A DNA stretch of 63,790 nt, filler included, from Guillardia theta CCMP2712 (lineage: Eukaryota; Protista; Cryptophyta), in NCBI RefSeq assembly GCF_000315625.1. It is 6 parts of 6 records of this genome, joined end to end, with 100 filler letters (N's around TTAATTAATTAA, not from the genome) between each part and the next. Parts side by side here need not be neighbours in the genome. Positions count along the whole stretch, not along the records: positions 26,254 to 42,958 come from NW_005434455.1; 5 more parts are not named here. One strand, written 5' to 3'. How positions within the stretch are numbered: position 1 is the stretch's first letter; each line of letters starts with the position of its first letter. The translations under genes were made by a program, and so were the position numbers. Under the pieces are notes generated by a model. That model worked only from the letters and a program-made list of their open reading frames with translations, was not told the origin of the DNA and did not search any database. Positions 26,154 to 42,958 of the stretch are shown piece by piece.

Positions 26154-26641
26154 NNNNNNNNNNNNNNNNNNNNNNNNNNNNNNNNNNNNNNNNNNNNTTA
26201 ATTAATTAANNNNNNNNNNNNNNNNNNNNNNNNNNNNNNNNNNNNNNNNNNNNCCCCCGCCCCAATCTCCCTTCACCATCTTCTCCCTTCACCATCTTCT
26301 TCCCCTCCTCTCCTCTTCTCTCCTCTTCTCTCCTGTTCTCTCCTCTCCTCTCCTCTCCTCTCCTCTCCTCTCCTGTCCTCTCCTGTCCTCTCCTGTCCTC
26401 TCTTCCCTTCCCTGCCATCCTGGGCAACTTGTCTCAGTGTCAAGTTCGTAGCATCTTCTGATCCACGGGTGGGTCACAAGACTACCCCTATTTCATAGTG
26501 TGTTTAATGGGGTTATATTGAATTTTTGAACCGGATCACCCCTCCTACCAGATTCCCTAGTCGAGATGAGAGGGCAGAAATGAAGCACTAGGTCAACCAG
26601 ATAGGGAGAGCATTGCTGCCCCAGCACCTGCCGCTGCCACA

Positions 26642-29540
26642 ATGGTGACGAAGGCTGGATTTCTTCGCAGGGTCGTGAGGGTAGTAGCGAGCTCCTCCTC
26701 CTCCTCCTCCACGTCCTTCTCCTCGCGCTTCGTATCCTCCTCCTCCTCCTTCTCCTCCTCCCAGAGTTCTTCTTGCTTCTCGAGACCTGGCTGTGTCGCA
26801 CGACTCCCCGCTGCACCTCGCCCCACGCCCCTCAGAGGATCTTGGAGCAAGTCCAGGGCTGAGGGGCACGCGCAACCTCGCTCCGGAGTCAAGCAGCAGG
26901 AGAACATCTTGCTGCATGCACAGGCACGTGCCAGGCTGCCGGGTCAGCTCGGGTGGACCAGGAGGAGCATGAGCACGACGAACGAGATCCCTAAGATTGA
27001 CGACATGATCTACGAGCTCGGAAAGACCAAAGACGGTCAAGACGACGATTCTCCTTCTATCGTGTCGGACCTCATCAAGCTGTCCGAGAAGTATCTTGTG
27101 GAGATGGGGGAGCTGTCGCACCAGGGGAAGCATTATGAAGTCATCATGTTGTGCGAGGACGCCATGCAGGAGTACAAGAAGTACCAGGAGGAGCTCAGGG
27201 CAGACAGCGTTGAGAACAATGCAGCCAAGCTTCAGATCCTGCATTCCATTGCCGCCATGAACTTCACCGCCTCCACCTCAGCAGAAATAATCAAAGACTA
27301 CCGCAAGGCCATCGACTGTCTCAACGTTGTCATGCAAGCGTTTCCTCACGTTGCCAACCTCCTGCCCATGTTCTACTTGGTGAGGGCTGCCAACTATGGT
27401 CTCATCGGAGAGCACAAAAACTCTATCAGTGACCTGGAGGTGAGAGCGCGGCAGCTCCTCTGTGGAGGCTCCAACCTCTTCTGCCAGAACTGACTCGATC
27501 GCCAGAACTATGAGGCCATGATGGATAAGCAAGACAGGAAGATCGAAGATCTCACGGTAGGTCGATGCGCCTTAGGGTGCAGATCAGATACAACTCGAGT
27601 GATGGGTCTCTTCTTGTTGGCGTCCAACATCATCGCCTGCTGCTCTTTCACCCTCGTTGATGGTTGCTTCTAGTGCTGACACGTTCACCCTGCAGAGGAT
27701 TTTGATCATGTCACAGAAGATTCAAATGAATCTTGCGATGGACAAGCACGTCGAAGCCCTCACGATCCTGAGTAAGCTACGAAAGGTTCGGATGCTCGAT
27801 CGAGCTCCTGCTCCCTCACGCTCGTCTGTGCGCATCAGGTAGAGTTTGAGGATGTCAAACCCGAGGAGCCGGCACAAGGTGTACGTGAAGGCGAGACTGA
27901 GGAGGACAAGAAGTACGTCGACCCGCGCCTCAAGAAGAGCGTCTGCCAATCGACTGCTGACTTCTGGAGTGGAGTTCTGCATTTCAAGCAGGTTGACATT
28001 TCGCTTCTTTCTTTGTTGTTCCCACGAGCGAAAGAGCAAGAGGTTGAGGTTGACAAGAGTTTGGGGTTGACAAGCTTTTGGTTGTCAGGGCAACTATGCT
28101 GGAGCCATTGAGTATTTTGAATCCTTCGATCGACATCGAGAAGCTGGTACGGTCAACGAGCTGTTCTTGGTTCAGGTCTCAAACTCTCCCGAAGGCTTGA
28201 AGTGAACTGAATCTTCCTAGGACTGGTATGAGAAGTACCTTCGACAGCTCTTCGGTGCTTGCCATGCAACCGGTGCTTGTCCTTCTCTCACCCCCCCGGA
28301 TGTCCCATAGTCTCCTCTTCCCTCTTTCACCGTCGCTTTTCTTGCCTTTTCCGTATGCCTGCTACTGTGTCGCCTGCGTGCGCCTTCGGGCCTGGGCCTG
28401 TGAATTGCTCTTGTCTTTACTATCATCCTCCTCCTCCTCCTCCTCGCGCCCTCCTATCCTTCTCCTTCTCCTCTCCTTACTCGCCTGCCGCAGGGAACTA
28501 CCAAGGCTCAGCAAAGTACCTAAAGATACTGTGCGACATGTTTCCAGACGAAATTCAGGTTGAGCTTGCAGCATGTTTGCGTACCTCTGACAGCGCTGCA
28601 GTACCAGCAACTGTATGCAGAGACTTTGATGGTGTGCCAGAAACCAGGCGAGGCCAGGGCGATCTACGAGAATCTCGAGAAGAAGTACAGCAACGAGTCT
28701 TGTTGGCTCAAGCACTGACCCCTTGGCAGGAACAACTTGGCCGACTACAACCCAACCATCACGGCCTCGTACGCAAACTGCCTGGTGGGGCTGCACGACT
28801 TCGCCAAGGCGTACAGGTGAGCGAGATGCCTGCCCAGGGGCTGCTGGGCTGAAGTAGCGGCAGCGTCACGAAGAAGGCGATGGACCTGAACCCGGGGGAC
28901 TCGACGCTTGAGTTCTTCTTCCTCGAACTGCGCATGCAGTGCCTCATTCACTGCAGTCAGTCTCGGGGACGGTCGCTCCTGGGGATCTGATCTGATGCCT
29001 TGCAGGTACTGCCAAGGACACGTCCACCATGCCGTTCAAACCCGACCAGCTCTACCAGGAGCTGAAAACCCTCGTCCCCACCATGCGGGGAGGGCTCAAG
29101 GACGGCACTGACGAAGTCAGCCTCTACAAGCGCTCGCAGCTGGACGTGTTGGAGGCGAGCTGAGAAAGCCCCTGAGCCGCTCGATACTGACACTCACCGC
29201 AGGCCCAGCTGCTCTCGTGGAAGAACGAGGACGAGCCCAAGGTGACGGCTGCTCGTCTGCTCCTGCAGCCATGACCCCCCACGCAGCAATTCGAGTTCCT
29301 GAATCGAGCCACCTTGACCTGCCCCACCAACTTCCACGCATGGATGAACACAGGCCTCCTTCAGCAGGCCAATGTGAGCTGCCTCCTCGCGCTGACTTGC
29401 TCTGCTGCTCACGATAGAGGCAGGGAGACGATAAGGGTGTGATGGACACGCTGAACAAGATCAAGGCCATCCTCGGGGAGAAGGCGGCGCAGGCAGCCAA
29501 GCAGCACTTTGACAGTGTGAGGAATGAGGGTAAGGCCTGA
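26642..29540 (+). CDS. TPR-repeat protein, multi-exon, with an Arg/Ser-rich N-terminal leader (possible mitochondrial presequence)
   Basis: Helical TPR-like exons (DYRKAIDCLN, GNYAGAIEYF, GNYQGSAKYL, KKAMDLNPGD); many ~50-nt introns; exact 3' end uncertain (29540 or ~29660). Confidence 0.7.
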
Positions 29541-29610
29541 GCGTGACAAGGCGAAAGGAGGAACAACGTGCTCCGCCGCGCAGAGAGAAGGGAAGGATCG
29601 TTAGCTGCTG

Positions 29611-31208
29611 CTAATGAAAACGAGTATATCTCCTCCTCATCCTCGCTTGACTCACTGTAGCTACAAGAGCCGCAGCTGCGATCATCATCGTAGCCAGTAG
29701 GAGGTTACTGATCCTCCATGAGCTCGAGCTGGCCTTCACCTGAGGAAAGGAGGAGGTCAGGAGGAGAGGCGCAAGTCACGTTTGAGTTTCACCTGCATGC
29801 TGGAGATGACGTCATCAGAGCTGCAGGAAGCCGGTGCTGCGAACACAGCGAGCATGTACGAGCCCGTGTCGAAGATGAGCCTCCTCTTCTGAGGCGGGGT
29901 TCCAACTCCGATGTCGATGGCGTACACGATCTTGTTGGTTTCCATGCGAACCTTCTCCAGCCTGTCCTCCTCCTCCCATCTGTACTCAGGCTCCAAGAAC
30001 GACAAGGTTGAGGAGGAAGACGGGGATGGCTTGGGCAAGTATCCTCTACTCGCTGAGAGCTTGTAGACCTGGTTGTGCGACAGTCTCCTCTTCTCCTCTC
30101 TCACCGCCTGCCTCAAGTGCTTGAGGAACTTCTTCTGGCCGCGCGAGCTCTTCAAACTTGTCGTTGGCGTGACGGCAGCACGCAGCTTGTCGACGTCCTT
30201 GTCGTAGGAGAAAGCCCCGAGGTAATCTTCGTCGATCTCGTCCTTGAGCGTGTAGTCTGCCGACCTCACCGCCAGCCCCATCCTCGGCTTGTCCATCTTC
30301 CGCAGATCGTGCATGACGACAAACTTGCGAAACCAAGGGTCCCCGAGGATAAGGCGTTCCTCCGAAGGCTCCACACATCCCTCGTACTCAATCTCAAACT
30401 TGCGGGGAGCACCGTCCTCGTCGATGATGGTGAAGTACAGGCTCCTCTTAATCCCCTTGAGCTGCATGTGCAGGAGCTTCTCGAAGGGACTAAACTCCAG
30501 CTGCTTCCCGACTGTCGTGTTGGGCATCAGGATGCAGGTCGTCCCGCTGTCGAACTTGCCGATGTACCCCAACTTCCTGTCCTTGTTCGTGAAGCTCAGC
30601 AGCTCCACCGCATCGCTGCCATCACCGTATGAGATCGACGCGACCTGCACACCATAGTCGATGCCCTTCATCGGCAGCCATGCGACCGGTCCCGACACTG
30701 AGGAAGGGTCGTAGTCCCCCAGCTGGATCTCAGCTTTCCACTCGTTGACTGCCATGGCGAAGAAGCGCGGCATGGGCTGGAACTCGTAAGGCTGCTCGAT
30801 CTCCCACTCACTTCTCGCCGACTGTGTCAGCGTCTTGAACAGGGAGGGACTCCCTGGTGTATCCTGCCAACCGAAGCCCAGGATGCCGTCAACCTGGCGC
30901 ACAGCAGGTCAGTCAGCCTCACAGCAAGCGCTCCTCCTCCTCACCCGCTTGCAGATCTGCTTGTTGCAAGAGGTGATCAACCCGAGGCGGGTCTCGACGG
31001 TGTACGGCCCGAAGCTGATAAGGTCCTGCCCCGTACATCCCTGCATGCGCGTCTTGTCCAGGAAGTGGAGGTCCACGTGGGAAGAAGGGACGGGGGAGAA
31101 AGTCAGGCTGTCCTCGGGATCAAAGAAGGACCGTTTCCCCCCTATAGCTTTTCCAGAGCACAGCAGGCACCCCAATAGAAGGTGGAGCCAGCCCTTTTGA
31201 AGGACCAT
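29611..31208 (-). CDS. Pepsin-family (A1) aspartic protease with signal peptide and C-terminal TM anchor; catalytic motifs in permuted order
   Basis: VDGILGFG, FDSGTT, LILGDPWFRKF, then YAIDIGVGTPPQ...IFDTGS; in-frame introns 30894-30944 and 29740-29792. Confidence 0.85.
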
Positions 31209-31799
31209 GGTCCAATAACCCGACTCCCTGGTCCTGGTCCTGGTCCTGGTCTGATGTGTCCCTCACTAACCTCTTCCTCTTCCTCTCCCTCTCCCTCTCC
31301 CTCTTCCTCTTCCTCTTCCTCTTCCTCTTCCTCTTCCTCTTCCTGCTTGTCCTTCCTCTCTCTGATTCTTCACCCCTAACAGCGTTGAGCCATCCTGTGT
31401 GCAACAACGATAAAATAAGATTTAGTAAAGTTTGTTCTATAATATTTATAAGATAAATTTCAGTACCAGAGATAAAAAAACTACAGAAGTCTAGATACAG
31501 CGATCGTCACTTTTCAAGAGACATGCGACCTCATCCCCGCTTCTGCTGAGGATCTGAGGAGGGATGAGGGTCAGTTGGACATGTATGGCGACGCAAGAGG
31601 AGGGGAGGGAGGAGGGGGAAAGACGAGGGAGGGAGGGAGGGAGGGGGAGTATGAAACATGAGAACAAGAGAGAGAAGGAAAGATTCATATCATCAGGTGC
31701 TGCGCTCACGCAAAACCCGCTGCGCGAGTTGGCGGAGGAGCAAGAGGATGCGAAGCAGTTTGGAGAGCACTTCTATGCAGCTGATTGTGTTGCCTCCAG

Positions 31800-34700
31800 A
31801 TGGTTTCTCGTCTTATCCCGGATTCGATCAAATATGGTCAGGTGTCGCGCGAGCTCTGAAGAGGAAGCATGTCAACTGAGCCTCCTTGCGTGTAGGTTGT
31901 CGCCAAAGCTACCACTGATGACGAGATCCCTTGCCCGGGTTACATCCAGGCAGATCAGATGTCTTGCATGCCAGGAGTGCTTGCTCACTTTGATGCAGGA
32001 GGAGTTGAAGAAACTCTCCTTCGACATGGATGCGTGTAGGTGAGCTTTACAGGATTGAAATATGCCCCCATGTAACCGGCCTGGCAGTGTGATTGAAGAC
32101 CAGCTTCTAGGCGAGGAAGAGCCTGCTGGGGCTGCCCTGATGTTGATGTGCAGCCCGTCTCGACAAGAAGTCCTCCAATGTCAAACTCAAGACCCTCAGG
32201 ATTATCAAGCTGCTCTGCGACAGCGGTTCCCCCAGGTGGCTGCAGCCATGGCAATGAACGATCAGTCGAGCTCCTGACACGGTCTTCAGCTTCAAGAGGG
32301 ACATGCAGCGTCGGACTACAGCGGTGAGTTCATGCAGGAGCACGGCAAGACACGGCTGAGCTGCACTCAGATACGAGAATGTCTCCACTGGCGCGGCGAT
32401 CCTCACCCCACCATGGGAGAACTCCCTTCACAGATGGTGCGAGAGACGGCGCAGCAGGTCGGGGGTCTGCTAGAGGCGGATGAAGATGGTTGATACGTGA
32501 GCATCTAGGTTATCAACGCCGTCTTCGACACTGAGACCCAGCAGTTGAGGAGCAACCCTCCTCCGACGGCTGCAGCTCCTCCTCCTCTTTCAACCATCAG
32601 TGACAACGCAAGAGTCACGTCGGCGGTAGCATTGGGTTGACCTGGTGTGCAGGTGATGGGTTTGAAAGACACACAACCCCATGTCGAATCGAAGAGGTAT
32701 AGCCGGCCGGATGTCCGGCATGACGCTTATCCGTCTGTCGTGCAGATACGAAGGGTTCGGCAGCGACACGTCGCGGTCGACTGACGACGGTCATCGCTCG
32801 CTCAACAGCTACTTCAGCCATCACGTCCAGCAGGTGTCTGCTACTCGCACATGCTACCACTTGCCCTCAACTACTCGCACGTGCTACCACTTGTCCTGAG
32901 CCGCTGGCTAATGTCGATCGTCCTGAGTGTTTGTGCTCGCAGAATTCCGCGCAGCACGGCAACAACTCTCGCATGGCAGGTATTGCTGCAACAAGATGCG
33001 GCTCGTTGAACCTCTGACTCCTGACAGGTTTTGGGACCGTCTCGAAGGATCAAGGGGGTTTGGGACTGGTGAAGGTCAGCTGGAGTTGTCGGCTCTCCCC
33101 AGCATGATACTTGTCGTCCTAGGGTGCAGCCACTGTCCTGTCAAGCGGATTGACTCAGTTCAAGGACAAGGTGCTCGGCCCAGCTAGGGCTCCAGCTCGA
33201 CCCTGCTGACATGAGCACTTAAGATTACAAAGCCTGCCGGCTCTAGTGATCTCCCGGACAGCACGAGCGGAAGGGGCCAAGGCGGCATGTCCGGAGGAGG
33301 AAGCTACACTGGAGGGCAGGCGGTGATGGGCAACATGGTGCAGGAGGTTCAACGACTGCCTCAGGTGATGGCTGCGCAAGAGAAGCATGCAATGCTCACG
33401 ATCCTTCCACAGGCTCCTCCTCCGTCCTCCGCCTCATCCCACGAGAGCTCCTCCCTCAACGCGAACTCCCTCGGTCGCCAAGTCCCCGCGTTTGCGGAGC
33501 CACAGGTTGAGCCTGTCAGGCCAGCAGTGGGAGCATACGAAGAGAGCGTTGTTCAGGTCCTCCTCCTCCTCCTCCTCCTCCTCCTCCTCCTCCTCCTCCT
33601 CCTCCTCCTCTTCAGAACGTGGGGGGCTGATGCTGCAGCAGGCGCTGACTGCTCCCGGGGGACTGAGAGCGGCCCCACCAAAGGAGGAGTTGAGGGACCT
33701 AGTGAACAAATGCCCCTCCCTCGACCTGCCGCTGCTCGTCGCACTTCTTTGCAGCAAGCTCGAAGCGGATGCCTGGCAGTCCCGCCTGAAGACGTTGCAC
33801 GTGCTGGATGCCCTGCTGAAAGCGGAGAACACGGAAGTGAAGCACAAAGTTCACAAGCTGCTGCAGCACAGGCTCGCTCTCATTGAGAGTCTCTCGTCGA
33901 GCCCGCAAGCCGCCCTCGCCGACATGTCACAGAAAGTCTTGAAGGAGATCTCATCCATCTCGGCCGAACCCGCGCAGCCGCAGACTTCTAGGAACGCGAG
34001 CAACGACCTGCTCGACCTCGGGCTGGAGGTCAAGCAACCCGTCGCTCCCACCTCGCTGTTCGCGGGGCTGACGATCGCTGCCGAATCCAACGGGAATCCG
34101 TCGGGGGCTGCAGGAGGGAACCAAAGGGATCCTTCCTCTGTCGACTCGCTGGTGTGCTGCCCGTTGCGATGCTGCTGATCTTGACGTGCTGACAGTTCGA
34201 GATGAGCCATGGAACCTCCCGGCAGCTCCCCAGCAACCAGTCGACCAACGACCTGCTGCAAGGCATCTTTTCCTCGAGCGCATCGGTACCTCCTGCTTGC
34301 TCTCCCTCCTCCCTGACACGTCCATGCAGGCCAAGCCCCCTCCGGATCCACTCTCTGACCTGCTGGGCATGCCAACGGTCAGGAGCGACTTGTTTCGGAG
34401 GCAACTGAGTTGGCGGCAGGGGGGTGCGAGCGCAGAGAACAAGATGCAGGCTGCTTTCTCGGGCTTCGACTTCCTCAACCCATCCGCTGCAGGTCATCCT
34501 CAAGCCACAGGGCCCAGCATTCCGATGATGGGGCAGAACCAGCTCGGGGGGCAGGTGGTGCCGTTGCTTGAACTCACCGGCGAGCTCATGTCTCGTAGGC
34601 TACAGGCGGACTGAACAACGTGCTCTCGAGCCTCGAGTCCGATTTCTTTGCCCCACAGGTCTTCCCTCGGGTTGCTCATCAGCTGCCGCGCCTTAACGCC

Positions 34701-34870
34701 ATTGCAGCTCGTCCACGAACACCAACAGCAGGAGCCTGACAGCAAAAGCGCTGGCACGTCAGCGGGATCGGTACCGCGGGCTCCTGCGCTTGAGGCCTCT
34801 GACAGGATCTGTCAGGATCATTTCTCTTTCATCTCGACCAACACATGTCCTCCCTCTCTCCTGTAACTTA
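31800..34870 (+). CDS. TEPSIN: Tepsin (AP-4 accessory ENTH + VHS-like protein), multi-exon
   Basis: 'VAKATTDDEIPCPGY', 'RLDKKSSNVKLKTLRIIKLLCDSGS', 'FKRDMQR', and second domain 'TAPGGLRAAPPKEEL...KLEADAWQSRLKTL'; disordered tail. End coordinate approximate. Confidence 0.8.
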
Positions 34871-34994
34871 GTTTTACTAGAACAAGACTGATGAGTCAAC
34901 ACACTGATCAGAGTCGCTACTCGTGAAGATTGGGAAGCAGATTGGGAAGATTGAAATCGAGTATGAGGGGGATGAGTAGGGGCAGAAGAAAGCG

Positions 34995-37818
34995 ATGCCA
35001 GTGAGGGAGAGGTTGGGGAAGAGGTGGAGGAAGGATGGAGAAGAAGAGAAAGAAGAAGAGAAGGACGAGACAGAAGACCATCAGAGACCACAAAAGAGAC
35101 GGAGAACTAAAGCTGTATGCCAGCACGGGCGGCAGCGATCAGCATGCAAGGACTGCGGGGGGAGCGGCATATGCGAGCACGGGCGGGTCCGATCAGCATG
35201 CAAGGACTGCGGGGGGAGCAGCATATGCGAGCACGGGCGGCAGCGATCAGCATGCAAGGACTGCGGGGGGAGCAGCATATGCGAGCACGGGCGGCGGCGA
35301 TCACGATGCAAGGACTGCGGGGGTAGCGGCATATGCGAGCACGGGCGGCAGCGATCACGATGCAAGGACTGCGGGGGGAGCAGCATATGCGAGCACGGGC
35401 GGCAGCGATCAGCATGAAAGGACTGCGGGGGCAGCGGCATATGCGAGCACGGGCGGCGGCGATCAGCATGCAAGGACTGCGGGGGCGGCAGCATATGCGA
35501 GCACGGGCGGGTCCGATCAGCATGCAAGGACTGCGGGGGGAGCAGCATATGCGAGCACGGGCGGGTCCGATCACGATGCAAGGACTGCAGGGGCAGCAGC
35601 ATATGCGAGCACGGGCGGCGGCGATCGCTATGCAAAGGTTGCAGGGGCAGCAGCATATGCGAGCACGGGCGGCGGCGATCACGATGCAAGGACTGCGGGG
35701 GGAGCAGCATATGCGAGCACGGGCGGGTCCGATCAGCATGCAAGGACTGCGGGGGAAGCAGCATATGCGAGCACGGGCGGCGGCGATCGACATGCAAGGA
35801 CTGCGGGGGGAGCAGCATATGCGAGCACGGGCGGCAGCGATCAGCATGCAAGGACTGCGGGGGGAGCAGCATATGCGAGCACGGGCGGCGGCGATCGAAA
35901 TGCAAGGACTGCGGGGGGAGCAGCATATGCGAGCACGGGCGGGTCCGATCACGATGCAAGGACTGCGGGGGAAGCAGCATATGCGAGCACGGGCGGCGGC
36001 GATTGAAATGCAAGGACTGCGGGGGTAGCAGCATATGCGAGCACGGGCGGCGGCGATCGAAATGCAAGGACTGCGGGGGGAGCGGCATATGCGAGCACGG
36101 GCGGCAGCGATCAGCATGCAAGGACTGCGGGGGGAGCAGCATATGCGAGCACGGGCGGCGGCGATCGAAATGCAAGGACTGCGGGGGGAGCGGCATATGC
36201 GAGCACGGGCGGCAGCGATCAGCATGCAAGGACTGCGGGGGGAGCGGCATATGCGAGCACGGGCGGCGGCGATCAGCATGCAAGGACTGCGGGGGGAGCA
36301 GCATATGCGAGCACGGGCGAGTCCGATCAGCATGCAAGGACTGCGGGGGGAGCAGCATATGCGAGCACGGGCGGCGGCGATCAGCATGCAAGGACTGCGG
36401 GGGGAGCAGCATATGCGAGCACGGGCGGCGGCGATCAGCATGCAAGGACTGCGGGGGTAGCAGCATATGCGAGCACGGGCGGCGGCGATCGAAATGCAAG
36501 GACTGCGGGGGGAGCAGCATATGCGAGCACGGGCGGCGGCGATCGAAATGCAAGGACTGCGGGGGGAGCGGCATATGCGAGCACGGGCGGGTCCGATCAG
36601 CATGCAAGGACTGCGGGGGGAGCAGCATATGCGAGCACGGGCGGCGGCGATCGCTATGCAAGGACTGCGGGGGGAGCAGCATATGCGAGCACGGGCGGCG
36701 GCGATCGAAATGCAAGGACTGCGGGGGGAGCGGCATATGCGAGCACGGGCGGCGGCGATCGAAATGCAAGGACTGCGGGGGGAGCGGCATATGCGAGCAC
36801 GGGCGGGTCCGATCAGCATGCAAGGACTGCGGGGGGAGCAGCATATGCGAGCACGGGCGGCGGCGATCGCTATGCAAGGACTGCGGGGGGAGCAGCATAT
36901 GCGAGCACGGGCGGCGGCGATCGAAATGCAAGGACTGCGGGGGGAGCAGCATATGCGAGCACGGGCGGCGGCGATCGAAATGCAAGGACTGCGGGGGGAG
37001 CGGCATATGCGAGCACGGGCGGGTCCGATCAGCATGCAAGGACTGCGGGGGGAGCAGCATATGCGAGCACGGGCGGCGGCGATCGCTATGCAAGGACTGC
37101 GGGGGGAGCAGCATATGCGAGCACGGGCGGCAGCGATCAGCATGCAAGGACTGCGGGGGGAGCAGCATATGCGAGCACGGGCGGCGGCGATCGAAATGCA
37201 AGGACTGCGGGGGGAGCAGCATATGCGAGCACGGGCGGGGGAGCGGCATATGCGAGCACGGGCGGCAGCGATCAGCATGCAAGGACTGCGGGGGTAGCGG
37301 CATATGCGAGCACGGGCGGGTCCGATCAGCATGCAAGGACTGCGGGGGGAGCAGCATATGCGAGCACGGGCGGCAGCGATCAGCATGCAAGGACTGCGGG
37401 GTAGCGGCATATGCCAGCACGGGCGGGTCTGATGAGCATGCAAGGACTGCTGGGGCAGCAGCATATGCGAGCACGGGCGGCAGCGATCAGCATGCAAGGA
37501 CTGCGGGGGGAGCAGCATATGCGAGCACGGGCGGCAGCGATCAGCATGCAAGGACTGCGGGGGGAGCAGCATATGCGAGCACGAGCGGCGGCGATCAGCA
37601 TGCAAGGACTGCGGGGGGAGCAGCATATGCGAGCACGGGCGGGTCCGATCAGCATGCAAGGACTGCGGGGGCAGCGGCATTTGCGAGCACGGGAGGGTCC
37701 GATCACGATATGCAAGGACTGCGGGGGGAGCGGCATATGCGAGCACGGGCGGCAGCGATCAGCATGCAAGGACTGCAAGGGAGGGAGCAGAAGTGGCTTG
37801 AAGCAGGCGAAGGTCTAA
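34995..37818 (+). pseudogene. Cys/His zinc-binding repeat protein (CEHGRxRSxCKDCGGSxI x ~49; 54-bp unit), with internal stop and frameshifts
   Basis: 54-bp tandem array ~35117-37780; TGC>TGA at 35415-35417; partial unit and indels at ~37235-37440 and ~37710. Confidence 0.8.
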
Positions 37819-39194
37819 TCGCCTGGGCCCTACCCTGTGGCTCTGGATGCTGGATGCAGGCGTAGGGAACATACGGCCTCGGTTGAATCGAGGGAGGGTG
37901 ACTGGAGGTACGGAGAGAGACTCTCGAGTGTCAGAAACCTCGCGATCTTATCGTGTCTACACCTTCAGCAGAGGTCAAGTTAGAGTCTCAACTTGACCTC
38001 CTTCTGGTCGGCTGGGCTTGTCAGGCTCGCTGAGTCCGCCCCAGCAGCTGCTGGAGGTGGGACGGAAGGATGCAGGCATGCGGTGCTGAGAGGGGTGAGG
38101 CAGAAACAGTAGAGCATGCAGCCCGTGCGTCAAAGAGCCGTTTGACGCCGCTACAGGGGCATCGCCCTTGCGTCACTGGGAGCTGAGACCTTCCGGTGGC
38201 GGCGACTCAGTGACAGTGTCTGGAAGCTTAAAAGTTGCAATAAGCACCTCATGACAGCATCATGATAGCACGGTACGCGTGCGGGTGTAGCAGTCAGTGC
38301 ACGTGTAGGGTGTGTTCAACGGTGAGTCACAGTCTTTGCCTTGAGATCGGATGGAGGGACTTATAAGCATGATAGTGGTCAAGTTGCAGCCCGGCCGGCG
38401 GGCTCCAATCATTTGTTTGTCGGATCCGACCAGGAACAAGTCCTTGGGCGGTCACCCGGTACAGGTAACTTGCCTAAAGGGGACCGTGCCTCGGACTGAA
38501 AACAAGCTGCTGCAATGGATGCGAAGAGCGTCTACCGTAGGACTTTGAACCCGGCGTCGGAACCGTGGGACCTGGTCTGACAGGTGACCCCGCCTGCCAG
38601 TGCCGCCGCCGAAGTTCCGCCGGGCCGCAGCTCTGAGGCTGACTCTGTGGCGGCCGGCGGGCCCGGGCGGCCAGCCCGCCGGGGTGCGCCACTGCGCCAG
38701 CCTCTGAGACTCGGAGCATGAGGGTGATGATATGAGTTAAGTAAAATATGAACCAAGGGAAATGGACAGCGTTTATGGCGCCGCACATCGCAATGCCGCG
38801 TTGATGGACATTATTGATGCAGCCTGGGCGGCTGACCAGCTCTCAGATGATGGTAAGATATCAATGATAAGACGTGGGGAATCTGGTGTGAAGACGTGAG
38901 GTTCAAAGCGCCAAGCAAGTAGTTTCCATGGCTGAACCCTCCCTTGCAACGAGTTCGGTTTAGAGTGCTTCTATTGTAGAAGAGCATATGATTGCATGAT
39001 CCTGCTCAGCAGGTGTAAATCTTCATGTACATTACAGGGATGCATTGAAGCATTCAGAAATTTCATTTCACAAGCAGAGTATCACCAATGGCATGGATAA
39101 TGAAGTAGAGCATAGATCTTTTTTGAATGCACTCTCCTAGTCCAGTCTTGTGCGTGAAGTTTTCTACTTTGCTCGGCATTTCATGTGATAACAA

Positions 39195-39250
39195 TGAAAT
39201 CTTCGCTTTGAAATCTTCGCTTTGAAATCTTCGCTTTGAAATCTTCGCTT
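39195..39250. repeat. 14-bp tandem repeat x4 (TGAAATCTTCGCTT)
   Basis: Directly visible. Confidence 0.95.
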
Positions 39251-40499
39251 TGGTGTTTGCGTACCTGAATCGATCGTTCAGATGTAGATCTGCCAAATTT
39301 GGATACCAACGATGAGAGCGACGATCTAAATGGTGAGCAAGGTTCTGAATGCATCAATTACTTCGCTGACGAGCTCGTGCAGATCAAGAGCAAGATGACG
39401 ACAAGTGGAACGAGATGGGGCTGCCAGAGTTTCAGAACGACGTCATCTAGGGAGTTGGACTACGGGCGGACGATCAAGGTCAGAAGCGAAGTCGATGCTG
39501 GAGCAACCTGAGGGCGCTCTCTCAGAGCATCTCAGTGTTATTTGTGTGTGATTCGGTTAAGGTCACATGTTCTCCAAGTCAAATATAGTTTAGATCACAC
39601 ATGATGTCAAAGTTCATCGAGAAATTCTTGTAGTAGCTCCTCAGGTGATGTCTGGAAACAATCCTTCACCTTCTTGACGGTACAGGAGACATTGACATCG
39701 AAACCAAAGCCTTGCCAAGTTGCACAGCCCGTGTCGATCAGTCACTGTCACAGCCTCCTGCTCAGTGCAGCTGGACATTCAAGTTTGCGGTGCTCTTGGA
39801 ATCACTGAGTCAAAAGGATTCAGGCACCAGCACGTCGAACTCAGGAACTGTTGACGTGACGCGTCCTCAGCGGCCGTGGGTCTGAGCTGAGCCGCGCGCC
39901 GGCCTGCCAGGCTGCCGCCGCCGCCGCGGCGCGGGCCGGGGGCCGGGCCGCTGGCTGCCAGTGACAGTGAGTCAACTTGAACTGCCAGGGAACTTCGGAA
40001 CTTGAACGCCCACAGCCACGGGCCGCGCTGCCGAGCCTCGGAGTGACGGTGCATGGCCGCCCTGCCGGGCCGCGGCCGCTGACGGTGCGCCGGGGCCGCC
40101 TCGGCAGCCTCTGAAGTTCCTGCCACCCGGCTAGTGATAGTAGCCAGTGGCGATGCTGGCCCCCGACCCCGGGGCCCGGCCATATAAGATGCTCTGAGGC
40201 GCTTTACTGACGGGAAGAGATGTTGGGAGAGAGGGCGGGGGCATGCTGGGGAACATGGCGTTGGTAGAGGAGAGAGAAGAGAGAGAGGAAGAAGGCAAGC
40301 GGAGAGAGGAGAGAAGAGAGAGGAAGAAGGCAAGAGGAGGGAGGAGAGAAGAGAGAGGAAGAAGGCAAGAGGAGAGAGGAGAGAAGAGAGAGGAAGAAGG
40401 CAAGAGGAGGGAGGAGAGAAGAGAGAGGAAGAAGGCAAGAGGAGGGAGGAGAGAAGAGAGAGGAAGAAGGCAAGCGGAGGAGGCAGGATCAGAGAAAAG

Positions 40500-42700
40500 A
40501 TGAAGAGAAAAGACTTTGAGATCGCGCAGCGACATGGAGTGCAGGGCAAACCACAGCATGTGAATTCCAGGACATCCTGGCAGAGGATGTATCAGGTGCC
40601 CTTGTTTGCGGCGATACTTGCTAGTTCAATCCAACGCGGAGAGGGAGCGACCGGGTTTCATGTTTCCTTCCTTCACGGAGTAGCGTCAGGAGACCCACTT
40701 CCCGGCAGCGTTATCATATGGTTGTCACCCCCCTCCCTCTCCGACGACTTCCTCTCTCCTCTCCTTGTCTGTCCTCCTCTCCCTTCTTCCCCTATCTCAT
40801 TCTCCCCTCCTTCCCTGCATCTCCCCACGAACTCATCCTCGCTTGCAGGACGAGGGTCACCCCGCGCGACCCGACCACCTCCTCCATCCCCGTGCACTGG
40901 AGAGTTTCAGGGAGTGCGAGGGCGCTCTCAGCTGATAATCTGCCTCCCCCTAACGGCACTGTCATGGCGCTTCAAGTCAACGACTACGTGCTCAAAGTGG
41001 ACGTGAAAGGTCTGGAGGAAGGGAAGGATTACTTCTACTGCTTCGCTGTGGGACCCTCCCGCTCTCCCATTGGTCGGTTCCGCGTGCCAAGGGGAGCAGG
41101 AGCCAGGGTCGATCGCCTGCGGTACGCCGTTATGTCCTGCTCGAACTGGGGCTGGGGATACTTCAACGTGTACGAGGCTGCCGCGAGGTACGACCTGGAC
41201 TTCTGGATGCATGTTGGCGACTTTCTCTATGAGAATGGGCAGGATGTGTATCCCTCCCCTGCTCAGGCTGTTCGCTTCGCTCCTCCTCCCCTCGGCCTGC
41301 AGCCCCCGCATGAGGCCATCACTCTTGAGGACTACCGAGCGAGACATGCTCTTTACAGGTCTTTCGCTTCCGCTACCTTCTTTTCCCCTCCCTGCTCTCA
41401 TCGCTCCCCCCCCCCCGCCCCCCCCACTCCCTCTCGTTGTATCTTTTTCCTCTCCTCACTCGTCAATTCCCTGTCCTCCTCCTGTCCTCTCCCTCCCGCG
41501 CTCAGAAATCTCTTCTACATACTCTCTGTACTACCTTCCCATCGTTCTAACGCCTTTCTTCTATCCCGCACAAAAACCTCCTCCTCTCCTCTCCTCTCCT
41601 CTGCTCTCCTCTGCTCTCCTCTGCTCTCGTCCTCTCGTCCTCTCGTCCTCTCGTCCTCTCGTCCTCTCCTCCTCTCCTCCTCTCCTCCTCTCCTCCTCTC
41701 CTCTTTCCTCCTCTTCCTCTTTTCCTCTGCCTCTCTTCTCACCCTCCTCCTACAGGCAGGATCCTGGTCTGCAGAGCCTGAGCGCGAGCGCAGCTCTCAT
41801 CGCGATCTGGGATGACCACGAGATCGCAAACAACCCGTGGACCGGAGGAGCGCTGAACCACAACCCAGGGGAAGGCGAGTGGGAGGACAGGAAGGTAAAT
41901 GCTATCAGAGCTTACCATGAGTGGATGCCGACAAGGGCCGAACCTCTCGCTCCTCCCGTCGGCCCCAAGTTCTTCCGCTCCTTCGTCTTCGGGGACCTCG
42001 CTCGCCTGCTGGTGCTCGAGACGAGGCTGGTGAACAGAACCAACGGGGAGGCCGATCCCTTCCCCCTCGAAGACGACGACGGGGACGGGGATCCCTCTAA
42101 CGAGACGCCTTTCGGGTCACTTGCGGTGAGAGTCCGAGAGCTGCTGCAGGGCGTCGCTCCTCGGGACTGGGAGCAGACGCCTGGAGTGTTGGAGGGAGCG
42201 GAGAGGCTAAGGAAGGCCTTCACCAACTACTCGGAGGATGAGAACAAGCTCCTGCTGGGAGAGGAGCAGCTGGCGTGGCTGCGGAGCAACGTGGAGGGGA
42301 TGCAGCAGGAGGGGACGAGGTGGTTGATAGTAGGGCAGCAGCTCGTGATGTTCGACATGTTCCAGGACTTCGATGCCGTGCTCGATGGGTCTGCTGCTCC
42401 TGCTGGGATGAGGCCGGAGCGGAGGAGGGAGCTGCGCGACCTGCTGCAGAACGTGACGGGCTGGGGATGCACGAATCGCGCTTCCTGTACGTCCCAACGG
42501 CGGACGTACATGGGGGTAGACCCTACGGCGTACAAGGCAGAGGAGTTGGGGAAGGAGCAGGAGGTGACTGACGAGGACCGGGAGGTAGCAAGGCTCTTCT
42601 ACGCGCTCTCCAAGTTTGAAATCCCTTCCTCCTTCGACTCTTGGCAGGGGTATGCTGTCGAACGTCAAAGGTGAAGTGTGCTCCTGCCTTCTTCTCCCTC

Positions 42701-42741
<41 letters not shown>

Positions 42742-42958
42742 CTCGTTCATCTTCCGTCCTCCTGCTTGTCCTCTTCCTCTCTTCCCCTCCTTCGCTCCTC
42801 CTCCCTCGTGACGCACCTCCCATCTCAGGTTCCTCTCCTCCCTCACGGCCGCCCGGGGTCGCGCGGTGGTCTACGGGGGGGACAGTCACAACTCGTGGGC
42901 GGGAGTTCATCGCCGAGAGGACGGAAGCATCCTGTGTGCCGAGTACGACACGACCTCC
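40500..42958 (+). CDS. phoD: Alkaline phosphatase D family, multi-exon, 3' partial
   Basis: FLHGVASGDP, SCSNWGWGYF, HVGDFLYE, WDDHEIANN, AYHEWMP, LLGEEQLAWL, DSWQGY, GGDSHNSW. Confidence 0.95.

What the first reader, a model, noticed from the sequence alone, without database searches (positions are those of the whole stretch)
29611..31208. Apparently circularly permuted, membrane-anchored pepsin-like protease
Seen order: signal-like peptide; 'FFDPEDSLTF' (normally just after the first catalytic motif); flap; DGILGFG; second motif DSGT; ILGDPWF; a ~100-aa basic linker; then the normal N-terminal strands 'YAIDIGVGTPPQ...IFDTGS'; then a TM helix and short tail. Known: A1 proteases have the GTPPQ-DTGS segment first. 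No DTG-bearing exon is visible upstream before the divergent tepsin gene. Inference: the two catalytic Asp motifs are in swapped order, and the basic linker may be an internalised propeptide whose cleavage leaves a two-chain enzyme tethered by its catalytic strand.
Basis: partly seen in the sequence, partly recalled or inferred. Interest (0 to 1): 0.75.

Follow-up and report, generated by a model that had tools for sequence, protein, structure and literature searches.

The report
Circularly permuted membrane-anchored pepsin-like protease
This alga (Guillardia theta) expresses a pepsin-type protease whose first ~40 residues, including one of the two catalytic aspartates, sit at the end of the chain next to a membrane anchor; the same order is conserved in about 180 relatives, and I found no description of it in the paper library.

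Summary
The gene is Guillardia theta GUITHDRAFT_121265, on the minus strand at 31208-29611, with three exons encoding 497 aa.

- **Gene model:** a public spliced transcript contig carries the three exons joined exactly, with both introns (51 and 53 nt, GT..AG) removed.
- **Domain order:** signal peptide, then the equivalent of pepsin residues ~51-326 (flap, DGILGFG, DSGT, ILGD), a 110-aa linker, the equivalent of pepsin ~5-41 (GTPPQ..FDTGS), a stalk, a TM helix and a basic tail ending in YTRF.
- **Independent support:** a family profile against solved structures, Pfam, and two separate HMMs all give the swapped order, with each part present once.
- **Structure:** AlphaFold2 models the C-terminal DTGS segment at pLDDT 94-95. 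The body superposes on pepsin 51-326 and BACE1 (Z about 21).
- **Family:** 179 fetched homologues share the order. Named sources are transcriptomes of five cryptophyte genera, the jakobid Andalucia and Ancoracysta. In a tree they separate from canonical A1 proteases on one branch (support 99). Both catalytic Asp are essentially invariant.
- **Artefacts excluded:** there is no upstream DTG exon, no second domain and no misassembly in the coding region.
- **Still inferred:** the idea that the linker is an internal propeptide, cleaved to give a two-chain enzyme. A conserved, confidently modelled strand resembles the canonical pro-strand, but the similarity is not significant on its own.
- **Literature:** seven full-text searches found no description of a permuted pepsin fold.

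The parts
29611..31208 (-). Whole coding span of Guillardia theta GUITHDRAFT_121265: three exons, 497 aa plus stop.
   Evidence: The 100 % hit P0001 is named by NCBI. P0321, a 497-aa member of the same cluster, equals exon 1 + exon 2 + exon 3.
30945..31208 (-). Exon 1 (aa 1-88): signal peptide, FFDPEDSLTF, flap strands.
   Evidence: Translation. Exact match to transcript contig L001 2061-2324.
30894..30944 (-). Intron 1, 51 nt, GT..AG, phase 0, with an in-frame TGA.
   Evidence: Sequence. Absent from L001.
29793..30893 (-). Exon 2 (aa 89-455): DGILGFG, DSGT, ILGD, linker, GTPPQ..DTGS.
   Evidence: Exact match to L001 2325-3425. Used as the homologue search query.
29740..29792 (-). Intron 2, 53 nt, GT..AG, phase 0.
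   Evidence: Sequence. Absent from L001. The NCBI model reads through it.
29611..29739 (-). Exon 3 (aa 456-497 plus stop): end of stalk, TM helix, basic tail.
   Evidence: Translation. Exact match to L001 3426-3554.
31140..31208 (-). Signal-like peptide, aa 1-23.
   Evidence: Hydrophobic N-terminus, modelled as helix 5-19 at low pLDDT. Homologues also start with a hydrophobic leader. No dedicated signal-peptide predictor was available.
30264..31139 (-). Body, aa 24-298, equivalent to pepsin residues ~51-326 (rest of N lobe plus whole C lobe). Interrupted by intron 1.
   Evidence: Profile against PDB. Pfam Asp profile 41-219 on aa 25-218. VIA-align: aa 24-299 on human pepsin 51-326, Z 20.7; aa 25-300 on BACE1, Z 20.9.
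31062..31064 (-). Phe49 at the flap position equivalent to pepsin Tyr75.
   Evidence: Column counts over the family: Tyr 74, Phe 51. Alignment to pepsin ITYGTG.
30549..30551 (-). Asp203 of DSGT, the C-lobe catalytic aspartate (pepsin Asp215 equivalent).
   Evidence: Asp in 169 of 170 family members. Invariant in alignments A1, A2 and A4.
29934..30263 (-). Linker, aa 299-408 (110 aa): acidic flank, basic helical core, conserved strand, then a variable disordered stretch.
   Evidence: Composition. Model helices 312-361 at pLDDT 51-82, and 381-405 below 50. Family linker lengths run 29-258 aa, median 61.
30042..30068 (-). Conserved linker strand VYKLSASRG (aa 364-372), a candidate remnant of the propeptide's first strand.
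   Evidence: Strand E365-373; the 361-370 block has mean pLDDT 87. Family consensus v-K-l-x-a-x-R aligns with canonical r-i-P-L-x-K. Linker-only comparison gives E 0.088.
29838..29933 (-). Relocated N-terminal segment, aa 409-440, equivalent to pepsin ~5-41: first strands and the psi-loop with DTGS.
   Evidence: Family profile 383-416 matches pepsinogen 49-82. Pfam TAXi_N profile 1-42 on aa 412-452. pLDDT 94-95.
29868..29870 (-). Asp430 of DTGS, the N-lobe catalytic aspartate (pepsin Asp32 equivalent), now near the C-terminus.
   Evidence: Asp in 177 of 177, Thr in 175 of 177, Gly in 174 of 175 family members.
29719..29837 (-). Stalk, aa 441-462, between the DTGS strand and the membrane. Interrupted by intron 2.
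   Evidence: pLDDT 47-66. In the family the gap from the segment to the TM helix has a median of 49 aa.
29647..29718 (-). Transmembrane helix, aa 463-486.
   Evidence: Model helix 463-496 at pLDDT 84-89. 135 of 171 permuted homologues have a C-terminal hydrophobic 19-mer with mean Kyte-Doolittle score of at least 1.9.
29614..29646 (-). Cytosolic tail, aa 487-497, basic, with YTRF (a Yxx-hydrophobic motif) at 29617-29628.
   Evidence: Yxx-hydrophobic or acidic-dileucine motifs occur in 79 of 132 family tails, against 23.8 in shuffled tails (maximum 34 in 200 shuffles).
31209..31315 (-). Transcript-supported 5' untranslated region, up to a purine-rich (GAAGAG)n repeat.
   Evidence: Exact collinearity with L001 for 107 nt upstream of the ATG.
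29424..29610 (-). Transcript-supported 3' untranslated region; overlaps the 3' end of a convergent plus-strand gene.
   Evidence: Exact collinearity with L001 for 187 nt after the stop. The neighbouring TPR gene call on L001 ends 70 nt after the stop.

Best explanation
The gene encodes a type I membrane-anchored aspartic protease of the pepsin (A1) family whose chain order is circularly permuted.

**Architecture.** After a signal peptide comes the equivalent of pepsin residues ~51-326. This covers the flap, the rest of the N lobe and the whole C lobe with catalytic Asp203 (DSGT). A 110-residue linker follows, then the equivalent of pepsin ~5-41: the first beta-strands and the psi-loop carrying catalytic Asp430 (DTGS). 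Last come a short stalk, a TM helix and an 11-residue basic tail with YTRF. The break falls in the surface loop that in pepsin holds the Cys45-Cys50 disulfide.

**Mechanism (inferred).**
- The C-terminal segment folds back into the N lobe and completes an ordinary two-aspartate active site.
- The enzyme therefore works as a normal acid endopeptidase in the lumen of the secretory or endolysosomal system.
- It is tethered to the membrane through the very segment that carries one catalytic Asp.
- The tail motifs suggest adaptor-mediated sorting to endosomes or lysosomes.

**Origin (inferred).** A tandem duplication or fusion of an A1 zymogen gene, followed by loss of the two outer ends. The linker would then descend from the second copy's leader and propeptide.

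**Sub-claims and odds.**
- Permutation real, expressed and conserved: 0.95.
- Catalytically active: 0.7.
- Linker acts as an internal prosegment whose cleavage gives a two-chain enzyme: 0.35.

The confidence value given for this explanation (0.8) refers to the core claim: an expressed, conserved, circularly permuted, membrane-anchored A1 protease whose relocated segment completes the fold.
For: **Shown**
- Exact spliced transcript. P0321 and contig L001 carry the three exons contiguously at 100 % identity, with both introns removed.
- Swapped order by three independent methods:
  - Family profile against solved structures: profile 383-416 matches pepsinogen 49-82, and profile 39-304 matches pepsinogen 95-368.
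  - Pfam: Asp profile 41-219 on aa 25-218, and TAXi_N profile 1-42 on aa 412-452.
  - Separate body and N-segment HMMs: one hit each in P0321, with the N-segment after the body.
- No other A1 segment in the 16.7-kb piece.
- AlphaFold2 model of the window's own protein: pTM 0.75, body pLDDT 86-98, C-terminal DTGS segment 94-95. The Hanusia orthologue gives the same picture.
- Body superposes on human pepsin 51-326 (Z 20.7, rmsd 2.3 A over 234 residues) and on BACE1 (Z 20.9).
- 179 of the fetched homologues have the same order. They include transcriptome proteins from Hanusia, Rhodomonas, Hemiselmis and Guillardia, genome models from Baffinella and Andalucia godoyi, and a transcript from Ancoracysta twista.
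- Permuted and canonical proteins split on a single tree branch, SH-aLRT 99.
- Catalytic residues are essentially invariant: Asp of DTGS 177/177, Asp of DSGT 169/170.
- A C-terminal TM helix in 135 of 171 homologues. Sorting-type tail motifs in 79 of 132 tails against 23.8 expected.

**Supporting the origin and linker inference**
- A natural two-domain tandem A1 protein exists (Entomortierella P0189; its two copies are sister but diverged).
- The conserved linker strand aligns with the canonical pro-strand at the canonical spacing from GTPPQ.
- That strand is modelled as a beta-strand at pLDDT ~87.
Against: - Model coordinates could not be inspected. The position of Asp430 next to Asp203 is inferred from high pLDDT and pTM and from homology, not measured.
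- The flap tyrosine (pepsin Tyr75) is Phe49 in this protein and in 51 family members. From memory, that change weakens but does not abolish activity in fungal pepsins.
- The propeptide reading of the linker is weak. Linker-only against propeptide-only gives hhalign E 0.088, probability below 1 %; a reversed control gives E 0.43.
- Linker length and sequence vary widely, 29-258 aa.
- No proteomic, activity or localisation data were found.
- The canonical proteins in the tree are only those the searches happened to return, so the sister group and the single origin are not firmly established.
- The signal peptide was judged by hydrophobicity only.
Confidence: 0.8

Rival explanations
1. Same permuted fold, but the linker is only a passive tether. 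The protein is a single-chain enzyme with no zymogen stage and no cleavage into two chains.
For: - Linker length ranges 29-258 aa and its sequence is mostly unconserved.
- Much of it is modelled at low confidence.
- The propeptide similarity is not significant on its own.
- From memory of the pepsin structure, the canonical N- and C-terminal strands lie in the same sheet, so a short tether would suffice.
Against: - A strand motif (v-K-l-x-a-x-R) is conserved within an otherwise variable linker and is modelled at pLDDT ~87.
- It aligns to the canonical pro-strand at canonical spacing when anchored on the N-segment.
- From established knowledge, almost all A1 enzymes are made as zymogens.
Confidence: 0.4
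2. A catalytically dead pepsin-fold protein, acting as a binding protein or inhibitor like the xylanase inhibitor TAXI-I or the pregnancy-associated glycoproteins, that merely keeps the fold.
For: - The flap Tyr is replaced by Phe in this protein and its clade.
- No activity data exist.
- Some deep members carry altered motifs, for example DSAT and LGA in the Andalucia protein.
Against: - Both D-T/S-G motifs, the hydrophobic-hydrophobic-Gly motifs and GTPxQ are essentially invariant over about 180 diverged sequences, which is the pattern expected under selection for catalysis.
- 74 family members keep the flap Tyr.
Confidence: 0.12
3. An artefact: a misassembly, a truncated tandem pair, a pseudogene, or a mispredicted gene whose real mRNA has the DTG exon first.
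For: - The NCBI model of this gene is wrong at both ends.
- The transcript contig L001 diverges from the window upstream of a purine-rich repeat.
Against: - The three exons are contiguous and identical in a spliced transcript contig.
- The divergence lies 107 nt upstream of the ATG, outside the coding region.
- There is no other A1 segment in the piece.
- The same order, with an N-terminal leader and a C-terminal TM helix, recurs in complete ORFs from independent transcriptomes and genomes.
Confidence: 0.02

Closest known systems
Pepsin, chymosin and cathepsin D (canonical family A1 aspartic proteases)
   Same: - Same bilobal fold: Z 20.6-20.8 to pepsin over residues 51-326.
- Same two D-T/S-G catalytic motifs, the same hydrophobic-hydrophobic-Gly motifs and GTPxQ.
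- From established knowledge, mature cathepsin D is itself a non-covalent two-chain enzyme, with one catalytic Asp on each chain. That is a precedent for the proposed two-chain form.
   Different: - Chain order. The first ~40 residues, with the Asp32 equivalent, come last, after a 110-aa linker.
- No N-terminal propeptide.
- The Cys45-Cys50 loop is replaced by the new termini.
- The flap Tyr is Phe here.
- A C-terminal membrane anchor is present.
BACE1/BACE2 (memapsins) and plasmepsin V: type I membrane-anchored A1 proteases
   Same: - Luminal catalytic domain, a single C-terminal TM helix and a short cytosolic tail.
- Family tails carry sorting-type motifs. From established knowledge, the BACE1 tail has an acidic dileucine signal.
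- They are the top structural matches, tied with pepsin (Z 20.7-21.0).
   Different: - BACE has the canonical order and its anchor leaves from the C lobe. Here the anchor follows the relocated N-lobe segment and leaves at the position of the pepsin 42-55 loop, so the domain should face the membrane differently.
- Sequence identity is only ~20 %. Orthology was not tested.
Swaposin: the plant-specific insert of plant aspartic proteases
   Same: It is a natural circular permutation found within an A1 protease precursor, and the only permutation linked to aspartic proteases that the literature searches returned.
   Different: The permuted unit there is the inserted saposin-like domain, not the protease fold, which keeps the canonical order.
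Tandem two-domain A1 proteins (e.g. Entomortierella beljakovae KAF9434555.1, P0189)
   Same: Two complete A1 domains in one chain. This is the type of intermediate that the permutation-by-duplication model requires.
   Different: - Both copies are complete and in canonical order.
- It is not closely related to the permuted family in the tree.

Membership tests
Peptidase family A1 (pepsin-like; Pfam PF00026) | Bilobal pepsin fold | tested here: met
   AlphaFold2 model with pTM 0.75. aa 24-299 superpose on human pepsin 51-326 (Z 20.7, rmsd 2.3 A over 234 residues) and aa 25-300 on BACE1 (Z 20.9). Pfam Asp E 5.4e-20, above the curated cut-off.
Peptidase family A1 (pepsin-like; Pfam PF00026) | Two catalytic Asp in D-T/S-G-T/S motifs, one per lobe | tested here: met
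   DTGS (Asp430) and DSGT (Asp203). Asp is conserved in 177/177 and 169/170 family members.
Peptidase family A1 (pepsin-like; Pfam PF00026) | Canonical order: the N-lobe DTG segment precedes the flap and the C lobe | tested here: not met
   The order is swapped. This is the point of difference: the protein is homologous to A1 but topologically a permuted variant.
Peptidase family A1 (pepsin-like; Pfam PF00026) | Flap tyrosine (pepsin Tyr75) | tested here: not met
   Phe49 in this protein. Across the family the column holds Tyr in 74 and Phe in 51 members.
Peptidase family A1 (pepsin-like; Pfam PF00026) | N-terminal propeptide (zymogen) | tested here: inconclusive
   There is none at the N-terminus: the fold starts about 5 residues after the leader. 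A candidate internal remnant lies in the linker, but it is not significant alone.
Peptidase family A1 (pepsin-like; Pfam PF00026) | Pepstatin-sensitive endopeptidase activity at acid pH | not testable with these tools
   Needs recombinant protein and an assay.
Natural circular permutant of a known fold | Two segments homologous to one canonical domain, in swapped order, each present once | tested here: met
   One body hit and one N-segment hit in P0321. Together they cover pepsin ~5-41 and ~51-326.
Natural circular permutant of a known fold | The relocated segment occupies its canonical place in the 3D fold | tested here: inconclusive
   pLDDT 94-95 for aa 411-440 in a model with pTM 0.75 argues that the segment is docked.
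Natural circular permutant of a known fold | Order conserved in independent homologues, so not an artefact of one record | tested here: met
   179 proteins share the order. Named sources come from three eukaryotic supergroups. A spliced transcript exists for this very gene.
Type I membrane-anchored A1 protease (BACE-like architecture) | Signal peptide, luminal domain, single C-terminal TM helix, short cytosolic tail with a sorting motif | tested here: met
   This is an architectural resemblance only; orthology to BACE was not tested.

The most novel reading that the evidence does not exclude
The linker is an internal prosegment. In an acidic compartment the enzyme excises or cuts it, leaving a two-chain protease. 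A small membrane-anchored chain of roughly 10 kDa would supply the Asp32-equivalent and the first strands, while the soluble ~30-kDa body supplies the other Asp. Catalysis would then depend physically on staying docked to the membrane fragment, which gives a built-in spatial restriction with no counterpart in known aspartic proteases. The family would also be ancient, being present in Cryptista, Provora and Discoba.
Probability: 0.3. Interest if true: 0.85.

Novelty: new variant of a known kind. Interest (0 to 1): 0.7.

Why it matters
The pepsin fold is one of the most studied enzyme folds and a major drug-target class. As far as the held literature shows, it has been known only in one chain order.

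- **Protein evolution.** The break lies inside the N lobe and moves a catalytic aspartate to the far end of the chain. That shows the fold tolerates this rewiring in nature. It also gives a worked example of permutation by duplication in a two-lobed enzyme that itself arose by duplication.
- **Testable biology.** It raises a concrete question: is there an internal prosegment, and a two-chain enzyme tethered by its catalytic strand?
- **Annotation.** Domain models report only a partial Asp domain. The NCBI model of this gene lacks both its leader and its anchor.
- **Scale.** The family has at least 128 clusters at 50 % identity with E below 1e-30, and is unannotated beyond 'Peptidase A1 domain-containing protein'.

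Tried and rejected
- **Spliced protein never typed or joined by hand.** Exons were searched and translated separately by reference. The full-length protein used for folding is P0321, returned by the listing of cluster members. It turned out to equal the three exons.
- **Third homologue search.** A profile of the deepest-branching members (A6) returned only two proteins, because the candidate cap filled up. It added nothing on taxonomic range.
- **P0172 as an evolutionary intermediate.** This 704-aa protein with two A1 domains was rejected because its two halves are letter-for-letter repeats, most likely an assembly artefact.
- **Linker against propeptide.** Without the N-segment anchor, the comparison picks the same strand but at E 0.088, so I treat it as a lead only.
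- **ESM Atlas.** The look-up gave only generic aspartic protease clusters.
- **Model coordinates.** They are not exposed and the structural aligners are sequential. The Asp-Asp distance and a permutation-aware superposition could not be computed.
- **Literature.** Seven full-text searches and a look inside the CIRPIN paper gave no description of a permuted pepsin fold. They returned only the swaposin insert.
- **Plastid targeting.** Considered and judged unlikely, because only about 5 residues separate the leader from the first fold element, leaving no room for a transit peptide. This is inference.
Full report
**What is at the coordinates.** On the minus strand, three open pieces (31208-30909, 30902-29757, 29739-29611) are joined by two short GT..AG introns that I read from the sequence:
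- intron 1, 30944-30894, 51 nt, containing an in-frame TGA;
- intron 2, 29792-29740, 53 nt.

Both are in phase 0. The exons are 31208-30945 (88 aa), 30893-29793 (367 aa) and 29739-29611 (42 aa plus stop).

Exon 2 finds a 100 % match in Guillardia theta CCMP2712, GUITHDRAFT_121265 (P0001, 412 aa).

**The gene model is confirmed by a transcript.** The 90 % cluster of P0001 holds a 497-aa member, P0321. Its sequence is exon 1 + exon 2 + exon 3. It is encoded as one uninterrupted reading frame on JGI contig Ga0186123_100177 (L001).

Exact string matching places the three exons at L001 2061-2324, 2325-3425 and 3426-3554. They are directly adjacent, with both introns gone. Exact collinearity continues for 107 nt upstream of the ATG and 187 nt after the stop. 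Blocks further downstream are also 100 % identical with short gaps, so L001 is spliced G. theta RNA.

Upstream of a purine-rich (GAAGAG)n repeat, L001 and the window diverge completely. This junction is outside the coding region and is most simply an assembly chimera at a low-complexity repeat.

The NCBI model is wrong at both ends. It starts at internal Met55 and reads through intron 2. It therefore lacks the leader, the first fold strands and the membrane anchor.

**The order of parts is truly permuted.** Three independent tests agree.
1. A profile of 46 family members matches pepsinogen in two stretches in swapped order. Profile 383-416 matches pepsinogen 49-82, which is mature pepsin 5-38 including DTGS. 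Profile 39-304 matches pepsinogen 95-368, which is mature 51-324.
2. Pfam places Asp-profile positions 41-219 on aa 25-218. It places the start of the fold (TAXi_N positions 1-42) on aa 412-452.
3. Separate HMMs for the body and for the N-terminal segment each hit P0321 once, with the segment after the body.

The pepsin fold is therefore covered once. The break falls in the loop between pepsin residues ~42 and ~55, which in pepsin carries the Cys45-Cys50 disulfide (residue numbering from my knowledge of pepsin). tblastn with seven family proteins finds no further A1-like segment anywhere in 26254-42958. That excludes both an upstream DTG exon and a continuing second domain.

**Structure.** AlphaFold2 on P0321 with 66 aligned homologues gives mean pLDDT 82.6 and pTM 0.75.

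| Region (aa) | pLDDT |
|---|---|
| Body, 31-300 | 86-98 |
| C-terminal GTPPQ..DTGS segment, 411-440 | 94-95 |
| Linker strand, 365-373 | about 87 |
| Linker, 381-405 | below 50 |
| Helix, 463-496 | 84-89 |

The Hanusia orthologue gives the same picture. VIA-align puts aa 24-299 on human pepsin 51-326 (Z 20.7, rmsd 2.3 A over 234 residues) and aa 25-300 on BACE1 (Z 20.9, rmsd 2.1 A over 240).

A 30-residue hairpin would not be modelled at pLDDT 95 unless it were packed into the fold, so I infer that it completes the N lobe. I could not read coordinates, however, and the aligners are sequential. The Asp-Asp geometry is inferred, not measured.

**It is a family, not a one-off.**
- All 75 first-round hits that span both regions show the same order.
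- A profile search of 1.84 billion representatives gives 128 clusters at E below 1e-30, many matched end to end in one stretch.
- Of all the proteins fetched, 179 are permuted and 76 canonical by the two-HMM test. Body scores are above 195 bits for the permuted examples printed, against 81 bits or less for the canonical examples printed.
- Named members come from the cryptophytes Guillardia (at least five further paralogues), Hanusia, Rhodomonas, Hemiselmis and Baffinella. Others come from Ancoracysta twista (Provora) and the jakobid Andalucia godoyi (Discoba).
- A maximum-likelihood tree of the collinear body region (269 columns, 46 permuted and 29 canonical rows) separates the two classes on one branch with SH-aLRT 99. 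This fits a single origin. The caveat is that the canonical sample is only what the searches returned.

**Is it an enzyme?** Over the permuted set the Asp of DTGS is present in 177 of 177 members, its Thr in 175 of 177 and its Gly in 174 of 175. The Asp of DSGT is present in 169 of 170. The Gly of ILGD is present in 177 of 177, and GTPxQ is nearly invariant. That pattern indicates selection for catalysis.

The one departure in this protein is Phe49 at the flap tyrosine position. The family column holds Tyr in 74 members and Phe in 51. From memory, Tyr75Phe mutants of fungal pepsins keep reduced activity. I put the odds of activity at about 0.7.

**Topology and destination.**
- The fold starts about 5 residues after the hydrophobic leader, leaving no room for a plastid transit peptide (inference).
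- 135 of 171 permuted homologues have a C-terminal TM-like helix, usually followed by a basic cluster.
- Tails carry Yxx-hydrophobic or acidic-dileucine motifs in 79 of 132 cases, against 23.8 in shuffled tails (maximum 34 in 200 shuffles).
- This protein has YTRF near the end of an 11-residue tail. Its closest relatives have E-x-x-P-L-L type motifs.

By the established rules for adaptor-dependent sorting signals, this points to traffic between the surface and endosomes or lysosomes, as for BACE1. This is inference only.

**The linker.** It is 110 aa and about neutral overall. Acidic flanks surround a basic core (aa 331-375: 12 K/R against 2 D/E). Family linkers range from 29 to 258 aa.

Within this variability one strand motif is conserved: v-K-l-x-a-x-R, which here reads VYKLSASRG at aa 364-372. 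It is modelled as a strand at pLDDT ~87.

Two profile-profile comparisons were run.
- Linker plus N-segment against the N-terminal region of canonical zymogens. The alignment extends back from GTPPQ and puts this strand on the canonical pro-strand (r-i-P-L-x-K) at matching spacing, with high posterior confidence.
- The same comparison with the N-segment removed. The same pairing is the best hit, but at E 0.088 and probability below 1 %. A reversed control gives E 0.43.

This fits a permutation-by-duplication origin in which the linker descends from the second copy's leader and propeptide. A natural tandem two-domain A1 protein exists, Entomortierella P0189. Whether the linker blocks the cleft and is cleaved remains untested. 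From established knowledge, cathepsin D shows that an A1 enzyme with its two catalytic Asp on separate non-covalently bound chains can work.

**Comparison with what is known.** The protein is homologous to family A1 and most likely works like an A1 protease. It fails the family's canonical order, lacks an N-terminal propeptide, and here lacks the flap Tyr. In architecture it resembles BACE (a type I anchor and a sorting tail), but the anchor leaves from a different point of the fold.

The only permutation linked to aspartic proteases that seven full-text searches returned is the swaposin insert of plant enzymes. That is a different domain. Absence from the held library is not proof that the permuted fold is undescribed.

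**Verdict.** The gene is real, expressed and a member of a large conserved family. The internal-propeptide, two-chain idea is plausible but open. I file it as a new variant of a known kind, with interest 0.7.

Noticed in passing
window 29611-31208 (minus strand), NCBI model XP_005819536.1 / EKX32556.1 (P0001): The public gene model (412 aa) starts at internal Met55 and reads through the 53-nt second intron. It therefore lacks the signal peptide, the first fold strands and the TM anchor. The transcript-supported product is 497 aa (P0321).
   Followed up: yes
L001 1-1948 against window 31316 onward: The transcript contig and the window are identical from a purine-rich (GAAGAG)n repeat down through the gene. 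Upstream of the repeat they are unrelated: L001 carries a thioredoxin-like gene there that has no match anywhere in the piece. This is probably an assembly chimera at the repeat, in either the contig or the genome record.
   Followed up: partly
P0002 (Hanusia phi, EukProt EP00960 P035562), C-terminal ~50 aa: The orthologue's C-terminus aligns with a read-through of the equivalent of intron 2, followed by exon 3 in the wrong frame. That record seems to come from an intron-retaining transcript, and its TM anchor is hidden.
   Followed up: partly
window 29424-29610 and L001 3555-3741: The convergent plus-strand neighbour (a gene with faint TPR hits) ends about 70 nt from the protease stop codon. 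The two mRNAs must overlap at their 3' ends, which probably explains why one transcript contig spans genes on both strands.
   Followed up: no
window ~34995-37750: A stretch of about 2.7 kb with strong GC and AT skew. On the plus strand it encodes many tandem copies of a cysteine-rich unit (C-E-H-G-R-x-R-S-x-C-K-D-C-G-G-S-x-I), with only a weak Pfam DUF7895 hit (E 1.3e-4, below cut-off).
   Followed up: no
window 33387-34178 (plus strand): This ORF has a weak match to the tepsin VHS/ENTH-like domain (PF25827, E 0.0014, below cut-off).
   Followed up: partly
P0172 (JGI metagenome) and P0189 (Entomortierella beljakovae KAF9434555.1): Two proteins carry two full canonical A1 domains in tandem. 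P0172 is an exact repeat and likely an assembly artefact. P0189 has diverged copies and looks like a real tandem A1 protease.
   Followed up: partly
P0138 (Andalucia godoyi ANDGO_05950) and P0160: These deep-branching permuted members have DSAT in place of DSGT. In P0138 the ILGD motif also reads LGA. They may be inactive or atypical.
   Followed up: no
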